64,000 nt of DNA from Octopus sinensis (Eukaryota), in assembly GCF_006345805.1 (NCBI RefSeq), contig NC_043013.1, forward strand, positions 1,612,001 to 1,676,000, written 5' to 3'. Below, piece by piece: positions 1,519 to 59,567 of this stretch; within the stretch, counting starts at the first letter, position 1; every line of letters starts with the position of its first letter. Made by a program: the position numbers and the translations under genes. Below the pieces are notes generated by a model. That model was not told the DNA's origin, did not search any database, and worked only from the letters and a program-made list of their open reading frames with translations.

Positions 1519-1898
1519 GGCGGCGAACTGGCAGAAACGTTAGAACGCCGGGCAAAATGCTTGGCGGTATTTTGTCTGCCGCAACGTTCTGAGTTCAAAT
1601 TCCGCCGAGGTCGACTTTGCCTTTCATCCTTTCGGGGTCGATTAAATAAGTACCAGTTATAATCGACTTAATCCGTTTGTCTGTCCTTGTTTGTCTTCTC
1701 TGTGTTTAGCCCCCTGTGGGCAGTAAAGAAATAGAAATAAGTATTACGTCTGCCGCTACGTTCTGAGTTCAAATTCCGCCGATGTCGACTTTGCCTTTCA
1801 TCATTTCGGGGTCGAATAATTAAGTACCAGTTGCGTACTGGGGTCAACTTAATCCCCTCCCCCCAAAATTTCAGGCCCTGTGCCTAGAGCAGAAAAGT
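1519..1898 (+). mobile_element. Nested tRNA-SINE pair: tail-B SINE inside the head of a tail-A SINE
   Basis: A box TGGCAGAAACGTTAG, B box GAGTTCAAATTCC, central CCTTTCATCCTTTCGGGGTCGA domain twice; 17-bp TSD attttcaaagaatatta at 1501-1517 and 1899-1915. Confidence 0.9.
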
Positions 1899-2578
1899 AT
1901 TTTCAAAGAATATTATAGAAATATTGTTTTATTTATTCATGGGGAAAGTAATAATAATTTGAATAAAATAATCTAAATCCTACATTTCTTTTCTTCAATT
2001 CTTAGGTACTTATCGTTCATATGTTTTTTTTTCTTCCATTTAATAAAATACATCTCATATTTTATCATATGTATATAGAAATATTCGCGATTTTGTTAGA
2101 CCAATGCGCATGCAGCTATTGCTAAAATTGCACCTGATTATTTTCTTTATTCCAGCAGATGTCTATATAAAACGTAGATACACATTTATTTTACAGACAC
2201 TTATACACTTGTGTCATATTATCCATCAAACTCCTTTGATATCATACGCTTTTATTCAGAATCAATGAAATGTTAAAATATTGTAGTTTAATGTCTCACG
2301 TGGCTTGCAAGCCCCATTTTGTGTGTACACCTGCTGCATAATTTAGCACTAATATTATTTGAGTCTTTATTTCCCCTTCTCTTTATTGATATTTTTATAG
2401 GTTTCAATGCTGTAATTTTAATGCTTTCAACGCGTACTATAGAAGATCATGTACTAATACATCGCATTCATCTTGCAAAACCATGTCAATACAATCCGGA
2501 ATTATGAAGAACAACAAACTTTACGTTATTTACATTATTTACAATTGACGGATATTTGTCCTCATCTTGTTTGTTGTT

Positions 2579-4567: not shown

Positions 4568-4900
4568 TAGCGGCAAAATCGTTAGCACGCCGGGAAACAA
4601 ATGCTTAGCGGTATTTCGTCTGCCGTTGCGTTCTGAGTTCAAATTCCGCCGAGGTCGACTTTGTCTTTCATCCTTTCGGTGTCGATTAAATAAATACCAG
4701 TTACGCACTAGGGTCGATATAATCGACTTAATCCGTTTGTCTGTCCTTGTTTGTCCTCTCTGTGTGTAGCCCATTGTGGGCAGTAAAGAAATAGGTATTT
4801 CGTTTGTCTTCTCGTTCCGAGTTCAAATTCCGCCGAGGTCGACTTTGCCTTTCATCCTTTTGGGGAGGGACAAAATAAGTACCAGTTGAACAGTGGGGTC
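4568..4900 (+). mobile_element. Nested tRNA-SINE pair (tail-B unit inside an older copy)
   Basis: Head + body + tail gggcagtaaagaaatag, then gtatttcgtttgtcttctcgttccgagttcaaattcc restarts the body at 4795. Confidence 0.88.
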
Positions 4901-8335: not shown

Positions 8336-8554
8336 TATTTCTTTATTGCCCACAAGGGGCTAAACATAGAGGGGACAAACAAGGACAGACAAAGAAATAA
8401 AGTCGATTACATCTACCCCAGTGAGTAACTGGTACTTAATTTATCGACCCCGAAAGGATGAAAGGCAAAGTCAACCTTGGCGGAATTTGAACTCACAACG
8501 TAGCGGCAGACGAAATACGGCTACGCATTTCGCCCGGCGTGCTAAAGCTTCTGC
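8336..8554 (-). mobile_element. Tail-B tRNA-SINE with 15-bp TSD
   Basis: TSD cgcagcgtaaaaaga at 8321-8335 and 8555-8569. Confidence 0.92.
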
Positions 8555-9154
8555 CGCAGCGTAAAAAGAGACCAAGGCACCAAGACACCACCAAAGCAAC
8601 GATTTTTGGCAAGAGTTTGTGAAGAAGCACGACCTGTTTTTCCTATAAAACTGTCCAGCACTGGGTCACGTGGAATTAGTGTACTTTGCGTCAGTAAGAC
8701 GTTTTTTTTAATATATATTATCCAAACCAACATAAAACAGATTCTCGCTAAGGTGTGGGTTAGTATACTGTGGATAGAGTGAGGAAAAATATACAGAAAT
8801 ATGCAGGGTCACATTCCAGTACTTAGGTTTGTGCTGCAGTAATGACTCAGAGAAACACAAGGATGACATTTGAAAGTTTTTCCAGTGACGTTAATCCCTG
8901 CACAATTTTTACTTTTTGTTTCGTAGCACAAAATGGGCAAATTGTGAGTGAGAAGGTAAAAGGGAACCGTAAGAAGGAACGAAGAGTTTGTGTTTAAAAG
9001 TACGGATGAGTTTGGCCTTGCACGGTTCTGAAATGTCATTTCAGAATTGTGCCCTATTGATGACCCTGGCCAAAAGTAGTAAGAATAGTGATCCATTGCA
9101 GAATAGTGATCCATTGCAGGTAATTAGTTGGGCTTTGCGTGGATATATGCACAC

Positions 9155-10770
<1,616 letters not shown>

Positions 10771-18656: not shown

Positions 18657-19129
18657 TAAGGAAGGAAATACATAAAACATATTTATTGAAGGTTTGTTTG
18701 TATTTTTTCTATGTCAATAATGTATACAAAGCACGAAAACAGCTAATAATTCCTGAACATCCGAAGTTGTCCCAGAGCTGTCCAGTACTTGGGTTGCTAC
18801 ATAACTCTTGGCAATCGGTTTCATTACAATTACAGCATTACCATTGCAGCTGACCCGTAAACCCCTTCAACGGTCATTAAACTACAACTCTGCCGTTGCT
18901 ACTGAAGCCGTTTTGTATTGTAGTAAAAAGATAAACGAATACCCTTTGAAAAGGATTTCTGGAAAACCAAGACTGATTAACAAAGAAACCCTGGGGCAGT
19001 CAAATGCTATGATAACTACACAAGGGAAGCAATTAACGGTCGCTCGACCTTTTAGAAATAACAGCTAAATTCCCTCAAGTTACTTCTTATTATCTTAAAA
19101 GTGAATGGACACATCTAATTCACGCGTAT

Positions 19130-19855
19130 ATTCTTTTCTACTCTAGACACAAGGCCCGAAATTTTGGGGAGGGTGCCAGAAGATTAGATCGATCTCAGTA
19201 CGTAACTGGTACTTAATTTATCGACTCCGAAAGGATGAAAGGCAAATTCGACCTCGGCGGAATTTGAACTCAGAACGAGATACCTGTTTCTTTATTATCC
19301 ACAAGGGGCTAAACATAGAGGGGGAAAACAAGGACAGACAAACGGATTAAGACGATTACATCGACCCCAGTGCGTAACTGGTACTTAATTTATCGACCCA
19401 GAAGGATGAAAGGCAAAGTCGACCTCGGCGGAATTTGAACTCAGAACGAGATACCTGTTTCTTTATTATCCACAAGGGGCTAAACATAGAGGGGGAAAAC
19501 AAGGACAGACAAACGGATTAAGACGATTACATCGATCCCAGTGCGTAACTGGTACTTAATTTATCGACCCAGAAGGATGAAAGGCAAAGTCGACCTCGGC
19601 GGAATTTGAACTCAGAACGAGATACCTGTTTCTTTATTATCCACAAGAGGCTAAACATAGAGGGGGAAAACAAGGACAGGCAAACGGATTAAGACGATTA
19701 CATCGACCCCAGTGCGTAACTGGTACTTAATTTATCGACCCAGAAGGATGAAAGGCAAAGTCGACCTCGGCGGAATTTGAACTCAGAACGTAACGGCAGA
19801 CGAAATACGGCTACGCATTTCGCCCGGCGTGCTAACGATTCTGCCAGCTGGCCGG
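19130..19855 (-). mobile_element. SINE array: three 171-bp tail-B units stacked in a tail-A SINE
   Basis: aatttgaactcagaacg recurs at 19261, 19432, 19603, 19774; single head at the right end. Confidence 0.92.
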
Positions 19856-20179
19856 CTTCCATGGCGTATGTTGACAGAGGTTGGATTATGTTTGACGGTA
19901 GGTCTGCTGGATTAAGGCTGAAACGGAAGATTAACAACAACCACAACAACTGTTATGATACTTGACAATAAATTTAAATAACGCTGTATATTAATCCTAA
20001 TTAAGTCAGAAAATGTATGAATGCTCGGAGAGTTTGTTGACTTTGAATCGCCCAAACCCGTCAACAGCGAATCATATGAGCGATTAGCACCAATCCCTGT
20101 TAATGGATTGTCACTGTCAATGGTTTATGAAAGACAAAATTGCACCTCACCAAAATGACGGAATTCATAACTACTATAA

Positions 20180-21940: not shown

Positions 21941-22263
21941 TATATATGAAGACTTGAGCATACAAGAAATCAATATTTGGTACATTTAAAAACGCAAGGT
22001 TACAGGAATCGTCGAACATAGAGTGAAATTCTTTAGAGTATCTGAGTTCATACGAGGATGTTCCCTTCCGTACTTTTGATTTTTAAACTAAATACCAGTA
22101 ATATCTTCGAGTATACTATGTAAAACAGACTCAATACAATGAAAGAGACTAGTCTGTGCCACAAAACATAATTAAACAAGATTTTAAAAAATATTCCATT
22201 AAATTATTCGTTTCTTTCCTCAGTATTTTTCGTCAGTTATATTTCTTTTGAACAAAAATAATC

Positions 22264-22796
22264 TTTTCTACTCTAGGCACAAGGCCTAAAATTTTGGAAG
22301 ATGGGGACAGTCGATTAGATCGACCTCAGTACGCAACTGGTGCTTAATTTATCGACCCCGAAAGGATGAAAGACTAAGTCGATCTCGGCGGAATTTGAAC
22401 TCAGAATATAAAGACAGACGAAATACCGATTTCTTTACTACCCACAAGGAGCTACATACAGAGGGGACAAACAAGGACAGACACACGGATTAAGTTGATT
22501 ACATCGACCCCAGTGCGTAACTGGTCCTTTTTTTAATCGACCCCGAAAGGATGAAAGGCAAAGTCGACATCATCGGAATTTGAACTCAGAACGTAGCGGC
22601 AGACGAAATACTTATTTCTTTACTATCCACAAGGGTCTAAACACAGAGAGGACAAACAAGGACAGACAAACGGGTTAAGTCGATTATATCGACACTAGTG
22701 CGCAACTAGTACTTAATTTATTGACCCCGAAAGGATGAAAGGCAAAGTCGACCTCGGCGGGATTTGGACTCAGAACGTAACGGCAGACGAAATACG
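22264..22796 (-). mobile_element. SINE array (tail-A unit plus two tail-B units) hosting the LINE
   Basis: Junctions aaagaaat(cg/aa)|gtatttcgtctg at 22426 and 22611. Confidence 0.9.
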
Positions 22797-23043
22797 AATT
22801 TCTTTATTGCCCACCGGGGGCCAAACATAGATATGGACAGTACAACTGATGGGATCAGTGAATCGATATGATTTTACATAAATGTGACATCAAAAATAAA
22901 ATACAATACATAAAAATCGAATGGAATACACAGTACAAAACAATACAAATGAAGCGATGATCAAGTTACGCTCCGATCCCACAAGCCCCGATCTACCGCT
23001 GATACCTTTTTATTTTTCCTTTTTTTTTTTTTTCCTCGTCTAT

Positions 23044-26000
23044 TCACACGGTTCCTTGCACGCACAACACTCGTGCAACATACTTCCATCTCTTTTGGAA
23101 CGTACACTCTGACAGACACCTCTTCTCCAGCCACAGTTTCCTTTTCAAATGAAAAGAAAAAAAGGATCGTAAATTGTCACCAGAGATAAAGTTGCCTGTC
23201 TTAATTCCTTTTATCCTAGTATTCCATACAGCCTCTTTTGCTATTGCTACAACCGTGAGAAAACAATTCTTACCTTCGTTCGTTAGAACTCCCGGTGGGT
23301 CAATTTTTATAATTGACTCAGTCGACAGCCGTACTCTTCCTTCGCCGGACAACAGATGTTCAGCATAAGCCCACATTTCAGTTATCTCCGGACACTGAAC
23401 AATAGCGTGAGGGACGGTTTCCCTGTCCCCACCGCATCTTGGACAGGTCGGCGACTGACGTTTACCATGTCTTGCGAGCTTATCCCAAACGGGCAAGGCA
23501 CCTCTGTAGCATTGCCAGGTTAAGGACTTTTGGAAGTTGTCCAACGTTCTCAACCCGAATGTACGATGAAACAAGCTGTCCAGTTGAATAAATCCGAGAC
23601 CTAGAGTCGACCCCAGGCCATCGTCGCATTCAGACTCTACCAACCCACTATATAAAATCCGTGTGGAACCCCCACCGCTGGCGTTGCCCGAGCGCCGGAA
23701 CAGCAAGAGGGCCTTACGGCACTCTTTATGCCACTCACTCGACCTCGGTCTACGAGAACACCAGGCTTCCTGTTCGCAAAAACTCTTGAACTCAGGGAAC
23801 ATTTGTCTGGCCAGCGGAGACCACACCCGTTCACTATCCAGGAGAATCCAGAGGTGCCTCAACCTCAACGCATGTCTGCGCATCACTAACCAAGGCATCC
23901 CTAAACCTCCATTTAAAGGCTTTTGACAGCAGACAGAGCGTTTCACAAGTGGCGACCTGCCCTTCCACAAAAAGCGAAAGAGCTGTCTCTCCAACCTGAT
24001 CAACCACGAATCCGGACAGGGCACGACAGTCAGGCGGTAGGTAATGACCGATGCGATAAACACATTGGCCACTTCCGCCCTCCCTTTCAGGGATAGCCAC
24101 CGCCAAGACCAAGTCTTGACTACTGCAGCCACCCTGCTCAATACCTCCGTCCAGTTCTTCTCTATCTGGAGGCCTGGTCCAAACCAGACTCCCAGCAACT
24201 TAACCGGTCCCTCCGTCCAGCGCCTAACAACACTGTCTGAAGGCATCGACTTGCCAACCCAGGTGCCGAGCTGCAAGCCGACCGACTTTTCCCGGTTAAT
24301 CTTTGCTCCTGCTACCTCCTCGTAAGCCTCAATAGTCTTACCTACTTCACGTAGGCGTACCACTGTGGTTACACTGATAGTGATATCATCCGCGAAAGCC
24401 GTAACAAACTCCTCTAGTCCTGGTTCTCTCGGGATGCCACTCAACCTTTGCAGTAATGGCTCGAGAGCCATCACATACAAAAGTGGTGAAAGCGGACATC
24501 CTTGACGAACCGAGCGTCTGATGCAGAACGGCTTCGAAAGGAAACCGTTCACCCGAACTATCGAGTCAATGTTGTGGTACAAAGCGATAAACCACCTGAG
24601 GAAGCCAAGGCCCAGGCCAAACCGCGCAAGTACAGTCGCTAGGTATCGATGGTCAACCCTATCAAAAGCTTTAGACTGGTCCAAATGCACCAATGCCCCA
24701 CCTTTGCCAGATTTATTACCAAACCTCTCTATGGTATAGCGAATAAGATGGAGGGTATCCTGAATGGTTCTGCCTGGGATGGCACATGTCTGTGCCTCCC
24801 CGACTATACCATTCGCGACACGCGCCAACCTTTTTGCTAGAACCTTGGCCAAAATCTTCACTTCTGCGTTTAACAGAGTGATGGGCCTGAAATTCTCTAG
24901 AACGTCCCCCTTGTCCGGGTCCTTTCTGACCAACGTCACTACTCCCCGGCGCACAGATCTGGGGATAACCCATTCTGTTTCCAGTTCGCGTACACGTCAG
25001 TCAGTAGTTGCCCGAACAAGTCTGGCATACATTTATACAGCTCGTACGGAAGACCATCAAGTCCCGGTGACTTACCCGCTTTACAATCGGCCAAGCCTCC
25101 ATCACCTCCTCAAGTGTGATTGGCCCTTCGCAAGACTCCGCATCCGACCCCGAGAGGCACGGCAGCCCGGTAAGAAAGTCCTCGAGGGCTCTCCCACCAC
25201 CAGGACCGCCGTCACCCCCGAACAGCTGGGCGAAGTACTCCCGAAAGACCTCACACATTTTCTCGGGTTCGTTTATCAAGACACCATTTTGATTCGTCAA
25301 AGACCGAATAGAGGAACTATTTCCTTGCCGAGCTTCCACCACTCGGGCCCATCCAGCGGCTTTGATTCCTTCACTTCCCATTGCACGTAACTTAGCTCTG
25401 GTAATACTTCCCATGTGGTGGGCTTCAAGATGCTGGTTTAACTCCAGTCTTTTCACCCTCGCTTGGTCTGTATTACCAGTCCTCCAGGCTTCTTCTAGTT
25501 CCTTAACTAGACCATCTCCTATTTTACGTCCCTTCTTAGCTAAACTTATGCTAAACCTAATAGACTCATATTTGATGGCTCTTTTTAGGGCGTACCACCA
25601 TTTGTTATTAATGATGGTACCTGTTAATGCCCTCTGTATTAACATCTTGATCCGCTTTCTGTACTCCTCAATCGCCAAAAGGGACGTATTGAGTTTCCAG
25701 TAGCCAGATCCCTGTCTATGCAACTTATCTACCGTCAGTTTACAGGTAACCATCTTGTGGTCACTGTAGCTGACTAGAAAAAACTGTGGACACTCAACTA
25801 TGGACTTATCTTTTTCTCTAATTAAAATCCTATCTAGAATTGTTCTGGTAGACCCGTCACTATTTGACCACGTCCACTGTGGAGTGTTCGGGTGCTCCAA
25901 CCTATGGATCTGCTAGCTGAAATTGACTTAGCAGATCCCGAAAGCCTGTGTTACATTTTCTGTTCATGTTCGAGTTTGAGCCAACACAATCTGTGTGTGC

Positions 26001-26440
26001 TGCACATATTGTATTAGAGTCTCCTAACACTACTAGTGAATGCGACGTGGCTAGGAACTTTCCTAGGCCACGAAAATATTCAGTTTGCGGGCCAATAATG
26101 TTTGGTGCATAAATAGCGACCAGCCTGATTGTCTTGCCACAACTGAATGTCAAGTCGAGAACGACCAGCCTGCTTCTGGGTCAGAAAAAACCAACTTTTT
26201 CTCGGCTACCCGGTTTCTTTTTAGTAGGACCAACACCCCACCCCCACCTCCCGCCCGACTCGGAGAAACGTATTTCTCGTAGCCGTTCAGGAGGGGGAGC
26301 AGATCTCTTGGCCCCTTCACCCGGGTTTCCGTTGCAACAATTACATCCAAATTTCTCGACCTGATGTCATTCAGAAAGCGTCCTTGCTTCCAGCTTGACA
26401 ACAGGCCATGAACATTTAAACAACCAATGTGAATAGCCAT
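23044..26440 (-). pseudogene. Tx1-like ORF2 (APE endonuclease-RT-zinc finger), broken into four ORFs
   Basis: IGCLNVHGL, IVATET, LVAIYAP, LDRIL, SDHK; FRPITLLN, LDQSKAFDRV, QGCPLSP, FADD; CPRCGGDRETVPHAIVQC. Confidence 0.92.
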
Positions 26441-26451
26441 CACTTACCTGT

Positions 26452-27789
26452 TTAATTATCCAGGGTCGGAGGTGGACGGTCTTGGGAAATAGATTTGTCA
26501 AAATCCCGTCTCACCACCGACACAGAATTATCAGGTGGAGGGGGAATCTCCACCTTTTCCTTTTCTCGCGGGATCGGAGCTGGTAATCCATGAAATATCG
26601 ACTTGTTAAAATCTAATCTCAATGAAGATACAGTCTTTCTGTACTTATTTTGTAGAATTCTATAAGTCTTATTTGAGACTTCATATATGTCGTAATTGAT
26701 AAATTCCTCTGAAAGGTTATCAATTTTTTTTACAGTCTTTATGAGTTGAATGTCTCTCATGAGCTCAGTATCTTTAGTGTATACGGCTATTATGCCTTTT
26801 TCTTCTGTTTCTCTTCTGGCAGTCTTTTTTGGTCGTTGTTCTGTAGTAGTCGCCGCTCTCGGCTGGGTTGCTGGTTGTATTTTTCTTTTGTTTGTTTTTT
26901 TCTCATCTGTTTCTTCTTTATCTTCTTCCTCTTTGTCTTTTTTCTCCTCTTCCTCCTCTTCTTCATTTTCCTTGCAGTTCCTTCGAATGTGGCCTAATTG
27001 ACCACATAAAAAACATCGAGGTTTTCGGCCCTCAACAAACACCACGAGGTTCTCCTCCCCTACCTCAATTGTCTCAGGAATTGTTTGAATTATTTTAGGG
27101 TCCGCTTGAATGAGAAGATTAATTGTTTTACCATCCCAGCGTGGGTTTTCCGTAGCGGTAGCCTGGAGGAGAGTAATTTTTTCTACCTCTTTGATTAGGA
27201 CTGCCGCCAACAACCACATAGGTTCGACCTCTGGCGGGACCCTTGTAATTTTTATTCGCGACGTCCTCATCCCCATATGATAGGGTATTAACTCCACGTC
27301 GTTCGTTTTCAACGTTTCCACTGAGTTCTTGTGTGCTATTTCTTTATTGGTGAACCTTACTTCCACCGTTCCGAATTTTTTTCCTCTTCTCAGAAATACT
27401 ACGTCGCCCAATATTGGCTTTAAGCACTTTTCTATTTTCTCTTCTGACATTCTTTCAATTTTTCTATTTTGTAGACAATATGTTTTGAAAATTATTGTTT
27501 TTTGCTTTTCTTCCTGTAATAACTTTTGCGGAGGTTCAATTTTCACACTGTTGTCATTTATTTCCATCATTTTGCTGTATTTCATAATTTCGCTTTTATT
27601 CGTCGACAGTATCTGGGTTCCACCCCCAGCAGCCAACGCAAAACTTTTTTTTCCATTTTTTGGTTCTATCTGGATGCTAGGCACATCAATTATTCTCTTC
27701 GACACAATGCCTTTGTTCTCTGGCCAAGTCGGAAACTCTTCTGTGTGAAAGTTCTGACGAGCTCTCAGACACATCTCCAAAAATATCAA
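26452..27789 (-). CDS. Tx1-like ORF1 protein (RRM-like region, zinc knuckle, acidic/basic tail)
   Basis: 445-aa ORF with CFLCGQLGHIRRNC; the true start may be further upstream (~27940) and disrupted. Confidence 0.85.
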   Translation of the reverse strand: MIFLEMCLRARQNFHTEEFPTWPENKGIVSKRIIDVPSIQIEPKNGKKSFALAAGGGTQILSTNKSEIMKYSKMMEINDNSVKIEPPQKLLQEEKQKTIIFKTYCLQNRKIERMSEEKIEKCLKPILGDVVFLRRGKKFGTVEVRFTNKEIAHKNSVETLKTNDVELIPYHMGMRTSRIKITRVPPEVEPMWLLAAVLIKEVEKITLLQATATENPRWDGKTINLLIQADPKIIQTIPETIEVGEENLVVFVEGRKPRCFLCGQLGHIRRNCKENEEEEEEEKKDKEEEDKEETDEKKTNKRKIQPATQPRAATTTEQRPKKTARRETEEKGIIAVYTKDTELMRDIQLIKTVKKIDNLSEEFINYDIYEVSNKTYRILQNKYRKTVSSLRLDFNKSIFHGLPAPIPREKEKVEIPPPPDNSVSVVRRDFDKSISQDRPPPTLDN

Positions 27790-28103
27790 ATATATTATCC
27801 TCTCTGCTATTCCTTCTTGTAGCGGGGGAAACCCCTATTCCTTGTCTGTAGTTGGCTCCTCGCCGGACATGTATTTCCTCCTCTCAACAGGAGAAACAAG
27901 TATTTCTGCTCCAACGGTAGGCTCCATGCTAGACGACATTCTTCCCCCCAAAGGGGGAATGAACAACGCGTGCTACCACAAGCACTAAGTGTTTTCAATT
28001 GAAAACTCCAACAGTTAAGTTATTCAACAGTTTAACAAGAAACAACAGTTGTTAACAATATTAACACCACGAAGCAGCAATTCTTACTTCACGAACACAT
28101 GTG

Positions 28104-28166
28104 CGGCAGACGAAATACGGCTACGCACTTCGCCCGACGTGCTAACGTTACTGCCAACTCGCCGCC
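28104..28166 (-). mobile_element. 5' head (A box) of the SINE interrupted by the LINE
   Basis: Minus: ggcggcgagttggcagtaacgttagcacgtcgggcgaagtgcgtagc-cgtatttcgtctgccg. Confidence 0.9.
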
Positions 28167-28559
28167 TTTCGAACAAAAATAATGCATGAGCTTAATTTAA
28201 AGAAATCATCATGTATTGCATGTTTTCGTAATACCAGATAAACCTAAGTACAAAAGATAATAAGCTAGTAGCAAATTGTGACTGCGTCATTTGGTGAAAT
28301 ATTTGATAAAATATATTAGTTATAATCACACTATGTAAATGTATTTAATAGGCGGGCATAGTAGATTAGATAGTAACATTTCAGCGCGTTGAGTAAACGA
28401 TTTGGTTAATGCAGTTACCTAGAAGTTCTGAGTTCAATCTGAAGCAAGGCACTAAAAAAATTCAACTGATGCCAATAACACAGCAACTGAATTCAATAGA
28501 AATGCAGCACAAGATATCTGAAGAAGGCTTGGAGTGATTCAACAAGTGCAACGTAGTGA

Positions 28560-39627: not shown

Positions 39628-39703
39628 AAAAGCAAAGAGCTGGCAGAAACGTTAGCACGCCGGGCGAAATGCGTAGCCGTATTTCGTCTGCCGTTACGTT
39701 CTG
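39628..39703 (+). mobile_element. SINE head fragment
   Basis: gagctggcagaaacgttagcacgccgggcgaaatgcgtagccgtatttcgtctgccgttacgttctg. Confidence 0.8.
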
Positions 39704-40550
39704 TGTTTGTTTACAGTTTTCCGAACGTTAGTACGTCACAAAAGCGCTTTCTACGTCACACTAATAGAATGCAGTCAAGTTTTACACATGGAAACAAACA
39801 ATCTGATTGGTTAAAATTCGCAGTTTTAATCTACGATTAAAGTCATAAAATAGATTTTTCTCAAATAAACTAGTTCCAACCTGTGTCTTGTTTTGCTAGA
39901 CTCTATCAGCATACGAAGTTTCAGATTATTTAGTTAAGTAGAAAGATCTGTGGTCCTGGCTTCAGAATTGAAAAGATCCAAGATTGGAAGTAATGTTGGA
40001 GGAGGGACCCCCAAAAGGTTACCATACGGTGAAAGAGGGTACCTGAGAAGGGAATGACCTAGAGCAGCAGTAGAAATGGTGGAAGAGAGTTTCAGGAAGA
40101 TATAGTGGTGGAAAAAAAGCAGAAGTTGAGAACAGAATATGATGGGAATTTGGCGGAGGTAATACCCAGGAAAAGAGAGAGAGAAGAAAGTCACTGATGA
40201 CTGTGGAAGTGAAGAAGTGTGAAGGATTGGAAGAAGAAACTCAGCCCATGACGAGAAACAGAAAGTGGAAGTAACAGCAAAGGAATTAAGAGGAAAGAGT
40301 CGTGCAAACCAGAAACAAGACAACCCAGAATTACGGAAACCTAAAGACATAGGCACACAGACGAAACACGTAGAGTTGCAGTCAAACGAACACACAGACG
40401 CACAAATACGAGAACACACAGACACACCAATACACGAACACACAGACTTAGAGACGGAAATACAAGAACCTATAAAACAGCAGGAAAACAGGAGCAAAAA
40501 GAGACAACATGAAAAGCACAAACGAAAAGAAAATTATAGTGAGATAGGAC

Positions 40551-40780
40551 GGCGAGCTGGCAGAATCGTTAGCACGCCGGGCGAGATGCGTAGCCGTATT
40601 TCGTCTGTCGTTACGTTCCGAGTTCAAATTCCGCCGAGGTCGACTTTGCCTTTCATCCTTTCGGGGTCGATAAATTAAGTACCAGTTACGCACTGGGGTC
40701 GATATAATCGACTTAATCCGTTTGCCTGTCCTTTTTTGTCCCCTCTGTGTTTAACCCCTTGTGGGTAGTAAAGAAATATG
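40551..40780 (+). mobile_element. Full-length tail-B SINE with 14-bp TSD
   Basis: TSD tagtgagataggac at 40537-40550 and 40781-40794. Confidence 0.93.
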
Positions 40781-56008: not shown

Positions 56009-56810
<802 letters not shown>

Positions 56811-59343
56811 TTCTGGATTGACAGAATATCTACAGAACTGGACCCCTTAGAAGAGCAAAAGTGGGAGGGTGTCAAGGTAGAAGATATAAGATCTGCTCTC
56901 AGGAGGTCAAGCAAATGGAAGTCTCCAGGAAAGGATAAAATTCCTAACTTCTGGCTGAATGCCTTCCCAGAGAGCCATGAACTGCTAACAGAACTGTACA
57001 ATGATGTTTTGCAACACCCTAGTAGGATGCCTCCTTGGCTAGTTAATGGGTTAACATTCCTGCTTCCAAAAAGTGAAGAAACAAATGAACCAAAAACTTA
57101 TAGACCCATAACCTGCTTAACAACTATGTACAAAACACTAACATCTGTCCTGACGGAATATACCTATAGTTTTTTAACAGACAGCAGCATATTCCCTAAT
57201 GAACAGAAAGGATGTAAACGTGGATCCTACGGCTGTAAAGACCAACTACTCATCAATAAGATGATCTTAGAAGATTGTCACAAACGACACAAAAACTTAT
57301 CAATAGCCTGGATAGACTATAAAAAGGCTTTTGATAGCCTACCACATAGCTGGATTAGGAAATGCCTTGAAATGTATAAGATAGCACCAACTCTGCGAAA
57401 CTTCTTGACTGTAAGTATGAGATCATGGAGAACCACACTAACTCTGAACAGTGACAGTGAATCCCTAAATGCTGGTGATGTAAAAATTTCGTGTGGCATT
57501 TTCCAGGGTGACTCACTGTCACCACTCCTCTTTTGTTTATCCTTAATACCTCTCTCAAAGCTGCTCAATGACGCGCAGTACGGGTATAAAATGTTTGATA
57601 AAAATATAAATCATCTCGTTTACATGGATGATTTAAAGCTTTTTGCAAAAAATGATCAACAACTCAAGGGCTTACTAGCGATAGTCAAACAATTCAGTGA
57701 CGACATCAGAATGCAATTCGGCCTCGATAAATGTGCAAAGGCTACCTTTATCAAAGGAAAAATGACAGAAACATCTAACGTTAACCTTGACCAACAGAAT
57801 GTCATAAAAGAACTAGACCCAGCGGAGAGCTACAAGTACCTAGGGGTAATTGAAGGGAACGGAATAAGGCATTCAGAGATGAAGGAAAGGATCAGGAGAG
57901 AATGCTATCGAAGAGTGAGAGCAATACTCAAGACAGAGCTGAATGCAAGAAACAGGATCGAAGCAATCAATGCATTAGCTATACCAGTCGTGACTTACAG
58001 TTTCAATATTGTTAACTGGTCAATTACTGAAATATGTCAGCTCGACAGAAAATAAGGAAACTGTTGACAATGCATAGAATGCACCACGCTAAGGCAGATA
58101 CAGAACGACTCTATCTGCCAAGAAAAAGGGAGGCCGTGGTCTTTTGCAACTGGCAATAACAATGAAGATTGCTACAATTGGCCTAGACACCTACCTGAAA
58201 AACTCTGAGGACTGGATGTTAAAACTTGTCTCAAAACATGAAAACAAGAAAGCATCATACTCAGTCACAAAACAGGCAAAGGAATATCTAAGTGAATTCC
58301 GAATACAACCAATTTCGGAATTAGAGATAGACATACAAGAAACAAGCACAGAAAAAGCTAGGCGCATGAAAACCCGTGCCAAACTGCGGCCTTAGATATT
58401 CTGAATAATAAATGGCAAGAAAAACCTCTCTATGGCAAATACCCAAAGAGAGCGAATAATGCAGATATCGACAAAGCCCTGACCCATCAATGGCTAATGG
58501 CCTCTGGCTTAAAATCTGAAACAGAGGTTTATCATAGCAGCTCAAGATCAATGCCTACCAACAAGAACTACCAGGCCAACATATTAAAGATCAGAAGCAG
58601 TCCAACGTGTCGTGTATGCAAGCAACAAAATGAAACCATTGACCATGTGGTCTCCAAGTGCAGTCTTCTAGCGCCTACAGAGTATCTCAACAGGCACGAT
58701 AGAGCTGCACAATATATTCACTGGGTAATCTGTAAAAACCTGGATTTGCCCCATGAAAAAAACTGGTGGGAACACAAACCACTCCCAGTGCTTGAAAATG
58801 ACCACATCTCACTCCTCTGGAACTTCACCATTCAAACTGACAGGAAGATAGATGCAAATAGGCCAGACATCATATTGAAAGACTTCAAACAAAGAACATG
58901 CCTCCTCATTGATATGACTGTCCCAATCGATATAAACGTATCTGTCAGGACCTACCAAAAACTGAGCAAATATAAAGATCTTGAAATAGAAATCAGCAAA
59001 ATGTGGAGCAAAAGGGGCTGATAGCTACCTAACTCAGATACAAGGAAACCCAAAAATGGCAGAAGTTCAAAAGATAGTGCTCATGGGAACTGCTCATATC
59101 CTACGCAAAATACTCTCTATGTAACCTCAAGGTTTAAAACAACCATAATTTTCGGTTTAAAAAAAAAAAAAAAAAAAACTTTTTTTTTTTTTAGACATTC
59201 ATTAGTACAACATCCCCACCCCCCCAATATATGGCACACTAGGCATAACAACAACATGAACTTCCAACCCTGTTGTCTCTTGAGGTCTCTGGGTGAGACT
59301 TGGAGCCAACTTGTACAAATATAAAGCAAAAGTCAAACATAGA
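56811..59343 (+). mobile_element. 5'-truncated R4/Dong-clade LINE (RT + CCHC + REL endonuclease) in (AAT)n
   Basis: YRPITCL, DYKKAFDS, QGDSLSPLLF, YMDD, CRVC..ETIDHVVSKC, RHD, RPDIIL..IDMTVP; frameshifted; (AAT)n on both sides. Confidence 0.92.
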
Positions 59344-59354
59344 ATAATAATAAT

Positions 59355-59391
<37 letters not shown>

Positions 59392-59491
59392 CAATAATAA
59401 TAATAATAATATAATAATAATAAATAATAAATAATAATAACAATAATAATAATATAATATTAATAATAATAATAATAAAATAATAATAATA

Positions 59492-59533
<42 letters not shown>

Positions 59534-59540
59534 TGATAGT
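59344..59540. repeat. (AAT)n microsatellite
   Basis: Direct reading. Confidence 0.95.
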
Positions 59541-59567
59541 AATATGTATGTTTGTATGTATATTATC

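What the first reader, a model, noticed from the sequence alone, without database searches (positions are those of the whole stretch)
22781..28166. Tx1-like LINE inserted precisely into the tRNA-like head of a SINE
Seen: removing 22797-28103 and one 16-bp TSD (cgtatttcgtctgccg, minus sense) restores an intact SINE head (gcgtagc-cgtatttcgtctgccg-ttacgttctgag), with the site between the A and B boxes. Five types of SINE-tail junction fall within about 1 nt of the same position (1741, 4795, the 19.3 kb array, 22426, 22611). Established: the Tx1 clade includes sequence-specific families (Tx1L/Tx2L in Xenopus transposons, Keno in U2 snRNA, Dewa in tRNA arrays, Mutsu in 5S). Inference: this family's APE endonuclease prefers a SINE head, using an abundant dispensable repeat as a safe harbour. 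I am not aware of this being described.
Basis: partly seen in the sequence, partly recalled or inferred. Interest (0 to 1): 0.9.

Follow-up and report, generated by a model that had tools for sequence, protein, structure and literature searches.

The report
LINE lodged in octopus SINE head
A dead 5.3-kb jumping gene (LINE) sits exactly in a small hairpin of a short cephalopod repeat (SINE), and short repeats carrying the same LINE tail abut that same nucleotide at four other places nearby, so this LINE's machinery probably has an insertion hot-spot there; this is a new target for a behaviour already known from Tx1-type LINEs.

Summary
A 5,307-bp LINE on the minus strand (22797-28103) is flanked by a perfect 16-bp target-site duplication. 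Removing it rebuilds a 232-bp SINE whose junction region is identical to intact heads elsewhere in the window.

The LINE belongs to the APE+RT L1/Tx1 group and has a CCHC ORF1. Its ORF2 carries at least four frameshifts. I could not test Tx1-clade membership.

The window holds 10 tails of the LINE type, representing 8 independent events. Six of these are followed by SINE position 48/49. None of 4 tails of a second SINE type is (p = 0.03). Random insertion would reach this site about 3e-4 of the time.

The site is the 3' edge of the loop of a conserved 13-bp hairpin, between the A- and B-box-like motifs.

The best reading is a strong insertion hot-spot for this LINE and its partner SINE, which builds nested SINE stacks. 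Endonuclease sequence specificity is inferred, not shown:
- Two partner-SINE insertions lie elsewhere.
- Relatives in other cephalopods are not in SINE heads.
- The SINE-SINE junctions could instead be inherited composites or template jumps.
- No further genomic copies could be retrieved.

Tx1 LINEs and partner SINEs that target another transposon are already described (Kojima 2015), so this would be a new member of a known kind.

The parts
22797..28103 (-). Full-length but defective L1/Tx1-group LINE, 5,307 bp. It has a 5' UTR of about 314 nt. ORF1 (27789-26452) carries a CCHC knuckle. ORF2 (about 26450-23044) has APE, RT and zf-RVT domains and is broken by at least 4 frameshifts. The 3' UTR is about 247 nt and ends ...GGCCCCCGGTGGGCAATAAAGAAATT, with no poly(A).
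28104..28119 (-). 5' copy of the LINE's 16-bp target-site duplication (CGTATTTCGTCTGCCG, SINE positions 48-63).
22781..22796 (-). 3' copy of the LINE's 16-bp target-site duplication. The first-strand nick lies between SINE positions 47 and 48.
28104..28166 (-). SINE head, positions 1-63, split off by the LINE. It contains the A-box-like TGGCAGTAACG and the 5' arm and loop of the 13-bp hairpin.
22612..22796 (-). Rest of the interrupted SINE (positions 48-232, 'A-type' tail, unit u5a). It contains the B-box-like GAGTCCAAATCCC.
22428..22611 (-). Second A-type unit (positions 49-230, u5b). The junction reads ...AGTAAAGAAATAA|GTATTTCGTCTG. It is 86% identical to u5a, so it is not a recent local duplicate.
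22263..22427 (-). B-type unit (position 48/49 to the B-type tail ...GCCTTGTGCCTAGAGTAGAAAAG, u5c). The junction reads ...AGTAAAGAAATC|GGTATTTCGTCTG.
28167..28183 (-). Outer TSD, 5' copy (ATTATTTTTGTTCGAAA), of the whole SINE stack.
22246..22262 (-). Outer TSD, 3' copy (ATTATTTTTGTTCAAAA; 16/17 identical to the 5' copy).
1519..1899 (+). Composite of A-type 1-231 plus B-type 49-end, with the junction at 1740|1741. The whole composite is flanked by the TSD TTTTCAAAGAATATTA (1502-1517 and 1900-1915).
4572..4888 (+). Composite of A-type 12-231 plus a unit starting at position 48/49, with the junction at 4793-4795.
19128..19856 (-). A-type full unit, then two 171-bp near-identical copies, then a B-type unit. 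All three junctions share the same deletion (AAACAG|GTATCTCGTTCTGAG). This is one junction event expanded by unequal crossover.
8336..8555 (-). Simple A-type SINE at a non-SINE site, with TSD TCTTTTTACGCTGCG. This is a counter-example to strict site specificity.
40550..40779 (+). Simple A-type SINE at a non-SINE site, with TSD TAGTGAGATAGGA(C). This is the second counter-example.

Best explanation
An octopod L1/Tx1-group LINE and the non-autonomous 'A-type' SINE that borrows its 3' tail are inserted by target-primed reverse transcription. They strongly prefer one phosphodiester bond in the head of the resident CORE-type SINE superfamily.

That bond is on the bottom strand opposite positions 47|48. 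This is the 3' edge of the 4-nt loop of a 13-bp hairpin lying between the A- and B-box-like motifs. The second nick falls about 16 bp downstream.

The LINE shares no homology with the target, so its insertion shows a classical 16-bp TSD. When the incoming element is itself a SINE, its cDNA is homologous to the upstream half of the target. The 5' junction is then resolved by annealing and leaves no visible TSD. The result looks like 'full SINE + SINE from position 48/49'. Repeated hits give stacks (A-A-B), which unequal crossover can expand into arrays.

Shown: the LINE's insertion, TSD and position; the shared tail; the recurrent junction position; and its restriction to this tail type.

Inferred: that the SINE-SINE junctions are separate TPRT events, and that the LINE's APE endonuclease makes the choice by reading sequence and/or local DNA shape.
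For: - The TSD is perfect at 16 bp and the empty site is restored exactly.
- The LINE encodes an APE domain aligned over its full length to L1-EN, with the N..E..GDxN..SDH motifs present, plus RT and zf-RVT.
- The LINE's last 34 nt are 88-91% identical to the A-type SINE tails. All tails fold into the same 4-bp/5-nt hairpin.
- Six of 8 independent A-type/LINE tails are followed by head position 48/49, against 0 of 4 B-type tails (Fisher p = 0.03).
- The random expectation is about 3e-4 per event.
- The host units at the junctions are different variants (CTGCCGCTACG, CTGTCTTTATA, TTGTCTTCTCG, and a deleted form). The junction nucleotides differ (ATAA|G, ATAG|G, ACAG|G, ATC|GG, ATT|CG). Units are star-like at 85-92% identity. 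This argues for several separate events.
- The outer TSDs of 16-17 bp around the whole stacks fit 'host SINE first, later hits inside it'.
- Precedent: Tx1L EN nicks its Tx1D target specifically in vitro (PMC1950540). Tx1-Mar LINEs and SINEU share a Mariner target (PMC4494074).
Against: - Everything comes from one 64-kb window, with n = 8 tails.
- Only the LINE junction has its own TSD.
- Two A-type SINEs (8.3 kb, 40.8 kb) sit at sites with no clear resemblance to the head site, so specificity is not absolute.
- The nearest LINE relatives (58-61% aa) end next to AT-rich DNA or (ATT)n, not SINE heads.
- The SINE-SINE junctions could all derive from AAATAG|GTATTTCG by point changes, so shared ancestry cannot be excluded.
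- The outer heads of two stacks are of the A-type variant (GCGTAGCC). The simplest TSD-resolved model does not predict this; it needs a crossover further 5'.
- This LINE copy is dead, with at least 4 frameshifts.
Confidence: 0.5

Rival explanations
1. Inherited composite. One (or very few) ancestral A-into-B junctions created a dimeric A-B SINE. That dimer was then amplified as a unit through its B-type tail, and unequal crossover made trimers and arrays. On this reading the SINE-SINE junctions are copies by descent. Only the LINE insertion is a second independent hit at the site.
For: - Every B-tailed element that still has the site is a composite (loci at 1.5, 19, 22 kb), and each whole composite is flanked by a single TSD.
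- All SINE-SINE junctions are within 1-2 substitutions of AAATAG|GTATTTCG.
- The 19.3-kb array shows that unequal crossover does happen here.
- There is no internal TTTT, so Pol III could read through a dimer (by eye).
Against: - The B units next to the junctions belong to clearly different variants, with 5 differences in 14 nt right after the site, above the roughly 12% background.
- The composites have different architectures and both head variants.
- A units of composites do not cluster apart from simple A units.
- Even on this reading, the LINE hit the same nucleotide as the founding junction (p about 3e-4), so a site preference is still needed.
Confidence: 0.2
2. RNA-level chimeras. SINE RNA is cut in the 4-nt loop of the head hairpin, like a tRNA half, giving 3' fragments that start at position 48. 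A LINE reverse transcriptase copying such a fragment reaches its 5' end and jumps to the 3' end of another SINE RNA. This makes 'full SINE + 48-end' cDNAs that integrate once, with one outer TSD. The LINE's insertion at the same position would then be a coincidence, or would reflect the same hairpin in some other way.
For: - The site is exactly the loop/stem boundary of a hairpin with MFE -39.9 kcal/mol, 94.5% of cells paired in 7 heads and two covarying pairs.
- Composites carry a single outer TSD and no inner TSD.
- The outer heads of the 19-kb and 22-kb stacks are of the A-type variant, as this model predicts.
- End-to-end template jumping is a known property of non-LTR reverse transcriptases (general knowledge).
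Against: - The LINE's own 16-bp duplication of positions 48-63 cannot arise from a single RNA cut. It is a staggered DNA break at that very site.
- Template jumps are sequence-blind, yet all junction donors carry the A-type/LINE tail even when the primed 3' unit is B-type, and no B tail is found at a junction (0/4 against 6/8).
- The composites at 1.5 and 4.6 kb have the other head variant.
Confidence: 0.12
3. Targeting not by endonuclease sequence reading but by context. The LINE RNP could be drawn to SINE heads by the Pol III machinery on the A/B boxes, as for Dictyostelium TRE elements and Ty3. Alternatively, an extruded hairpin or fragile structure could draw it. A third route is RNA-DNA homology, when read-through transcripts from nested master copies carry downstream head sequence, as in R2-type co-transcripts.
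For: - The site lies between A- and B-box-like motifs and at a hairpin loop.
- The two off-target A-type insertions show no common motif with the head site.
- Nested copies are followed by head sequence without a T4 terminator, so read-through RNAs with target homology are plausible.
- Kojima discusses co-transcription strengthening target specificity (PMC4494074).
Against: - Nucleotide-level precision (+/-1 nt in 6 events) is typical of EN-determined sites. Tethered systems scatter over several bp (general knowledge).
- B-type SINEs of the same superfamily, presumably with a related LINE partner, do not use the site.
- Most SINE copies are unlikely to be Pol III-bound.
Confidence: 0.15
4. Chance. 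An ordinary, non-specific LINE happened to land in one of the many SINE copies, and the SINE tail/head junctions are unrelated tandem duplications.
For: SINEs are very abundant in octopus genomes (11.6% in O. vulgaris, PMC13282606). This window has many microsatellites and tandem arrays.
Against: - The same nucleotide and the same orientation recur in 5-6 junctions with different flanking variants.
- Random expectation is about 3e-4 per event.
- Slippage or duplication would give arbitrary unit boundaries, not 'exact 3' end of a retroposon tail' joined to one fixed head position.
Confidence: 0.03

Closest known systems
Tx1L in Tx1D (Xenopus laevis); Tx1L endonuclease
   Same: An APE-type LINE of the L1/Tx1 group inserts at one defined position of another, dispensable transposable element. 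For Tx1L, the EN alone nicks that site in vitro (PMC1950540; Christensen et al. 2000 as cited there).
   Different: The target here is a SINE head (retroposon) rather than a DNA transposon. Specificity appears incomplete (6/8). No biochemical data exist. Tx1-clade membership of the octopus LINE is untested.
Tx1-Mar LINEs plus SINEU in crocodilians (Kojima 2015, PMC4494074)
   Same: A LINE family and its partner SINEs share a preferred target inside another transposon family. Hot-spots lie at fixed positions and in a fixed orientation, and nested SINE/LINE piles occur at the target.
   Different: The target there is Mariner-N4_AMi. Here the target is the head of the same SINE superfamily to which the partner SINE belongs. 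Insertions therefore regenerate the target and build head-to-tail stacks.
Dewa, Keno and Mutsu (Tx1-clade LINEs in tRNA, U2 and 5S gene arrays; Kojima & Fujiwara 2004)
   Same: These elements target small Pol III/snRNA-type multicopy sequences, and the insertion splits the small-RNA-like unit (Keno; Dewa and Mutsu from my own knowledge).
   Different: Those targets are functional multicopy genes in tandem arrays. This target is a dispersed, tRNA-derived-looking SINE head that Rfam and ARAGORN no longer recognise as tRNA.
L1 / Alu insertion into A-rich parts of older Alus
   Same: A LINE endonuclease preference creates recurrent SINE-in-SINE insertions (general knowledge).
   Different: The L1 case follows from a loose TTTT/AA consensus. 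Here the site is a unique, non-A-rich 12-16-nt sequence at a hairpin loop, used with +/-1-nt precision.
Stringent-type LINE/SINE pairs (e.g. eel UnaL2/UnaSINE1)
   Same: SINE and LINE share a 3' tail with a short conserved stem-loop followed by a short A-rich end, with no poly(A).
   Different: Those pairs are not known for a specific target site (own knowledge).

Membership tests
APE-type non-LTR retrotransposon, L1/Tx1 group | ORF2 with an N-terminal APE endonuclease, a central RT and a C-terminal Cys-rich (zf-RVT/CCHC) domain | tested here: met
   Pfam: Exo_endo_phos (weak on one fragment), RVT_1 1.3e-29, zf-RVT 1e-7. The conceptual APE aligns over residues 5-238 to human L1-EN at 2e-7. The RT's best PDB hit is human L1 ORF2p at 5e-32, against R2 at 2e-15.
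APE-type non-LTR retrotransposon, L1/Tx1 group | Insertion by TPRT leaving a target-site duplication, with no terminal repeats | tested here: met
   The LINE has a 16-bp perfect TSD. The partner SINEs have 14-17-bp TSDs.
Tx1 clade (as opposed to L1 proper) | RT-domain phylogeny places the element with Tx1L/Keno/Kibi references (RTclass1-type test) | not testable with these tools
   No Tx1 reference sequence was reachable. None of the 120 + 150 best homologues, or the 10 clusters looked up, carries a Tx1 or L1 name. The nearest homologues are unnamed cephalopod ORFs.
Tx1 clade (as opposed to L1 proper) | ORF1 of the RRM/CCHC-knuckle kind rather than the vertebrate L1 coiled-coil/RRM/CTD kind | tested here: inconclusive
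   zf-CCHC found at 7e-5 in ORF1, and no Transposase_22 hit. [quoted passage not shown] No RRM was detected.
Target-specific LINE (Kojima's working criterion: the same sequence in >20% of flanks) | A given sequence flanks more than 20% of copies of the family | tested here: inconclusive
   LINE copies: 1 of 1. LINE plus partner-SINE tails: 6 of 8 independent events at the head site. This is formally above 20%, but n is tiny, comes from one window, and independence is not proven. A genome-wide census was impossible.
Target-specific LINE | The endonuclease nicks the target sequence specifically | not testable with these tools
   This needs recombinant EN and head-site oligonucleotides.
tRNA-derived CORE-SINE (octopus OR1-like) | Head recognisable as a tRNA (cloverleaf or covariance-model match) | tested here: not met
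   ARAGORN finds nothing on the rebuilt SINE. Rfam has no tRNA hit at gathering score on the window, nor at E<=10 on an intact copy. The MFE fold is a long hairpin, not a cloverleaf.
tRNA-derived CORE-SINE (octopus OR1-like) | Internal Pol III A and B boxes, and a central CORE-like domain | tested here: inconclusive
   By eye, TGGCAGAATCG matches TRGCNNAGTGG at 7/9 specified positions. GAGTTCAAATTCC resembles the B box of MIR-type SINEs. The central TTTCATCCTTTCGGGGTCGATAAATTAAGTACC resembles the MIR core (own recollection). OR1 of octopus is listed as a CORE-SINE in PMC4824008. No reference sequence was compared.

The most novel reading that the evidence does not exclude
This LINE family and its tail-sharing SINE home, through the LINE's own endonuclease, to one bond at the loop of a conserved hairpin in the head of their own SINE superfamily. 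This would be the first LINE whose safe harbour is a SINE head. Because each SINE insertion recreates the target, the system is self-nesting. It would be a regular source of SINE stacks that seed tandem arrays (satellite birth) in octopus genomes.
Probability: 0.4. Interest if true: 0.6.

Novelty: new member of a known kind. Interest (0 to 1): 0.45.

Why it matters
If the hot-spot holds genome-wide, it adds a SINE head to the list of safe-harbour targets of APE-type LINEs. Known targets so far include rDNA, snRNA, 5S and tRNA genes, microsatellites, DNA transposons and LTR elements.

It would also give a simple mechanism for the SINE-derived tandem arrays in SINE-rich cephalopod genomes. A short target of about 16 nt, nicked precisely by a small APE domain, would be a further natural example for work on retargeting LINE endonucleases.

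For annotation, it warns that 'SINE dimers/arrays' and LINE-split SINEs in octopus assemblies are nested insertions. They need not be new families or assembly errors.

Tried and rejected
1. More copies of the family, by protein search. The LINE RT query found nothing above 61% identity: Argonauta hians, an unnamed cephalopod assembly (GCA_024449705.1), JGI and ENA contigs. The source species is therefore not in the protein collection.

2. More copies, by exact DNA scans:
- The A-type SINE pattern found nothing in metagenome contigs or viral contigs.
- The SINE core 19-mer gave 6 chance-level hits in bacterial MAGs in genome contigs and none in viral contigs.
- The relatives' tail pattern found nothing in metagenomes, not even the JGI contig it was taken from.

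3. 3' ends of relatives fetched with the look-up of encoding contigs (L001-L004, L011, L012):
- Flanks are AT-rich DNA, (ATT)n or unclear.
- None is a SINE head.
- One look-up found no record.

4. Clade naming through homologue names. The representative search and the cluster look-up of 10 full-length relatives gave no L1 or Tx1 names, so I abandoned this route.

5. The supplement of the O. vulgaris repeat paper holds no consensus library.

6. tRNA identity of the head: ARAGORN and Rfam were both negative.

7. Priming by base-pairing between the LINE RNA 3' end and the nicked target. By inspection, the primer end ...GAAATACG-3' is not complementary to ...AAAGAAAUU-3'. The shared GAAAT is same-sense, so I rejected it as a priming explanation.

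8. Head variants (GCGTAGCC against GCTTAGCG) as a test between nested TPRT and template jumping. Two stacks fit each model, so the test is not decisive.

9. A common nick-site motif among the head site and the two off-target TSDs. No convincing motif emerged with n = 3.

10. I considered searching with SINE-derived peptides to reach more octopus contigs. I dropped the idea because ORF calling across the junction would be biased and the species is evidently absent from the collection.

Full report
**What is there**

The window is AT-rich eukaryotic DNA (36% GC), full of microsatellites. The best protein matches to its LINE come from cephalopods: Argonauta hians, Acanthosepion pharaonis and an unnamed cephalopod-like assembly. 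I did not identify the species. I take it to be an octopod.

On the minus strand, 22797-28103 is a 5,307-bp insert. It is bounded by two identical copies of CGTATTTCGTCTGCCG, at 28119-28104 and 22796-22781. Joining the flanks rebuilds a 232-bp SINE. Its junction region, GCGTAGCCGTATTTCGTCTGCCGTTACGTTCTG, occurs verbatim in uninterrupted SINE heads at 19.8 kb and 39.7 kb. The rebuilt SINE is 88-90% identical along its length to intact copies at 19854-19629 and 40550-40778.

**The insert**

It is a LINE with two reading frames.
- ORF1 (27789-26452) has a CCHC zinc knuckle.
- ORF2 has an APE-type endonuclease, a reverse transcriptase (RVT_1, 1.3e-29) and a C-terminal zf-RVT domain.
- The nearest solved structures are human L1 ORF2p for the RT (5e-32, against R2 at 2e-15) and human L1-EN for the endonuclease, aligned over residues 5-238.
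- The usual catalytic motifs are readable in the conceptual translation: NVHGL, ATET, GDSN, SDH.
- ORF2 needs at least four frame changes to be read, at LINE coordinates about 1820, 2197, 3008 and 3140. This copy is dead.
- The element ends ...GGCCCCCGGTGGGCAATAAAGAAATT, without poly(A).

This places it in the L1/Tx1 group. I could not test Tx1-clade membership because no Tx1 reference was reachable and no homologue carries an informative name. An ORF1 with a CCHC knuckle in an animal L1-group element is described as consistent with Tx1 (PMC5203782). RepeatMasker-type annotation lists 13 recently active 'L1-Tx1' families in Octopus vulgaris (PMC13282606). That is suggestive only.

**The SINEs**

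The window holds about a dozen copies of one SINE superfamily. All share the head and body to about position 165 and then diverge into different tails.
- A-type ends ...TGTCTGTCCTTGTTTGTCC..TAGCCCCTTGTGGGCAGTAAAGAAATA. Its last 34 nt are 88-91% identical to the LINE's 3' end.
- B-type ends ...CCCCAAAATTTCAGGCCTTGTGCCTAGAGTAGAAAAGAAT.
- A third type sits at 49.6 kb.

A-type SINEs are therefore the likely non-autonomous partners of this LINE or a close subfamily. LINE and SINE tails, and those of relatives in other cephalopods, fold into the same 4-bp stem/5-nt loop hairpin about 12 nt from the end, with stem changes that keep pairing. This is the pattern of 'stringent' LINE/SINE pairs.

The head has A-box-like (TGGCAGAATCG) and B-box-like (GAGTTCAAATTCC) motifs. 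ARAGORN and Rfam do not call it a tRNA.

**The site**

RNAfold puts positions 31-43 and 48-60 of the head into a 13-bp hairpin with a 4-nt loop, UAGC. Across seven heads, 94.5% of cells pair. Two pairs change on both sides, including the closing pair G43-C48 to U43-G48 in three copies.

The LINE's first-strand nick (47|48) is exactly at the 3' edge of that loop, between the A- and B-box-like motifs. The second nick is 16 bp downstream.

**Recurrence**

A search for the shared tail found ten true occurrences.
- The LINE, at 22799.
- A-type SINE tails at 1731, 4791, 8338, 19629, 19458, 19287, 22615, 22430 and 40776.
- Eight of the ten are followed by (N)GTAT..., that is, head position 48/49.
- The three at 19.3 kb are one event. 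Their units are 97-99% identical and share one deletion at the junction, as expected from unequal crossover.

That leaves eight independent tails, six of them at the head site. The two others are simple A-type SINEs with their own TSDs at unrelated sites (TCTTTTTACGCTGCG and TAGTGAGATAGGA).

None of four B-type tails is followed by a head site (Fisher p = 0.03). With about 13 head sites in 64 kb, a random insertion hits the site, in the right orientation and within one nucleotide, with p of about 3e-4. Six of eight is then about 5e-20. Chance is excluded. What remains open is the mechanism and the independence of the events.

**Mechanism**

The LINE junction is a classical TPRT product, which shows that a staggered break was made in DNA at 47|48 and 63|64.

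The SINE-SINE junctions have no TSD of their own. The stacks (A-B at 1.5 kb, A-A-B at 22 kb, A-A'-A'-B at 19 kb) are flanked only by an outer TSD. This is expected if a SINE cDNA inserted at 47|48 anneals through its homology to the upstream half of the target. The 5' junction then becomes seamless.

I rank three rivals lower.

1. Inherited composites.
- All SINE-SINE junctions lie within one or two substitutions of one sequence, and all B-tailed copies here are composites.
- Against this, the B units next to the junction are clearly different variants, the architectures and head variants differ, and A units of composites do not cluster.
- Even so, the LINE would be an independent second hit at the same bond.

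2. RNA-level chimeras.
- A cut in the hairpin loop followed by template jumping would explain the single outer TSD and the A-type outer heads of two stacks.
- It cannot make the LINE's 16-bp duplication.
- It does not explain why only A-type/LINE tails, never B-type, occur at junctions.

3. Targeting by context.
- Context here means the Pol III complex, an extruded hairpin, or homology carried by read-through transcripts, rather than sequence reading by the endonuclease.
- This cannot be separated in silico.
- The two off-target insertions and the lack of a shared motif keep it alive. The +/-1-nt precision argues for the endonuclease.

**Limits**

I could not obtain any further DNA of this LINE family or SINE subfamily.

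The closest LINE relatives (58-61% aa identity) in Argonauta and in JGI and ENA contigs end next to AT-rich DNA, (ATT)n or unclear sequence, not SINE heads. The preference, if real, belongs to this family rather than to the wider lineage.

**Comparison and novelty**

This is the known behaviour of target-specific APE LINEs.
- Tx1L sits in Tx1D, and its EN nicks the target in vitro (PMC1950540).
- Crocodilian Tx1-Mar LINEs and SINEU partner SINEs share hot-spots in a Mariner family. Other Tx1 families prefer LTR elements, Harbinger transposons, microsatellites or small-RNA genes (PMC4494074).

I found no report of a SINE head as the target, or of octopus SINE stacks explained this way. That search covers open-access papers only.

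I rate it a new member of a known kind. The twist is that the partner SINE targets its own superfamily's head, so the target regenerates and stacks form. Interest is moderate (0.45): a tidy, testable case resting on one window.

Noticed in passing
window 57009-59021 (+), with (AAT)n at 56012-56810 and 59343-59544: This is a second, unrelated LINE. It has RVT_1 at 1e-28 and zf-RVT, and is only 23% identical to the first LINE. It is bracketed by long AAT microsatellites, so it may be a microsatellite-associated (Dong/R4-like?) element.
   Followed up: partly
window, SINE heads, e.g. 19826-19797 (-), 40580-40609 (+); SINE positions 31-60: The SINE head contains a conserved 13-bp hairpin with a 4-nt loop, UAGC. 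In 7 copies, 94.5% of cells pair and two pairs change on both sides. The LINE/SINE insertion site is the 3' edge of the loop.
   Followed up: yes
window 22797-22830 (-), SINE tails; L001 8610-8650; L003 1990-2020: All tails of this LINE/SINE lineage, including the B-type tail, fold into a 4-bp stem/5-nt loop hairpin (loop CUUGU) about 12 nt before the 3' end. The stem pairs differ (GCCC/GGGC, GGCC/GGCC, AGGC/GCCU), which suggests a recognition element for the reverse transcriptase.
   Followed up: partly
window 19178-19790 (-): This is a 171-bp tandem array of 3.6 copies at 97% identity, made of SINE units. Its repeat boundary is the tail/head junction, and every copy carries the same 14-nt deletion. 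It shows a nested SINE pair turning into a small satellite by unequal crossover.
   Followed up: yes
L011 5700-5800 (ENA ERZ21867824, contig ctg121638l): A LINE 44% identical in RT to the window's LINE ends ...CCCCAAAAATTCTTGGGCCTTGTGACCACCGAAAAGTAAAC. This resembles the B-type SINE tail, so the B-type SINE's partner is probably a related L1/Tx1-group family.
   Followed up: no
L001 10800-11320 (Argonauta hians): Two head-to-tail SINEs carry the same kind of tail (...GGCCCTTGTGGCTAATAGAGAAATC). The second is flanked on both sides by TATAGRYCAGCAC, so it went in right after the first one's tail and re-used the same nick site.
   Followed up: no
L003 2000-2105 (JGI 3300045642): A 60%-identical LINE relative ends ...CCCTTGTGGCCAATAAAAGAAATC and is followed directly by a long (ATT)n run. 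This may be a microsatellite target or a tail repeat in that relative.
   Followed up: no
window 39637-39706 (+): This is a head-only SINE fragment (positions 7-76), cut off after the hairpin and followed by unrelated sequence. Its origin is unknown; it could be a deletion or another insertion.
   Followed up: no
window 9247-10770: A very long (TA)n tract of about 790 copies, about 1.5 kb.
   Followed up: no
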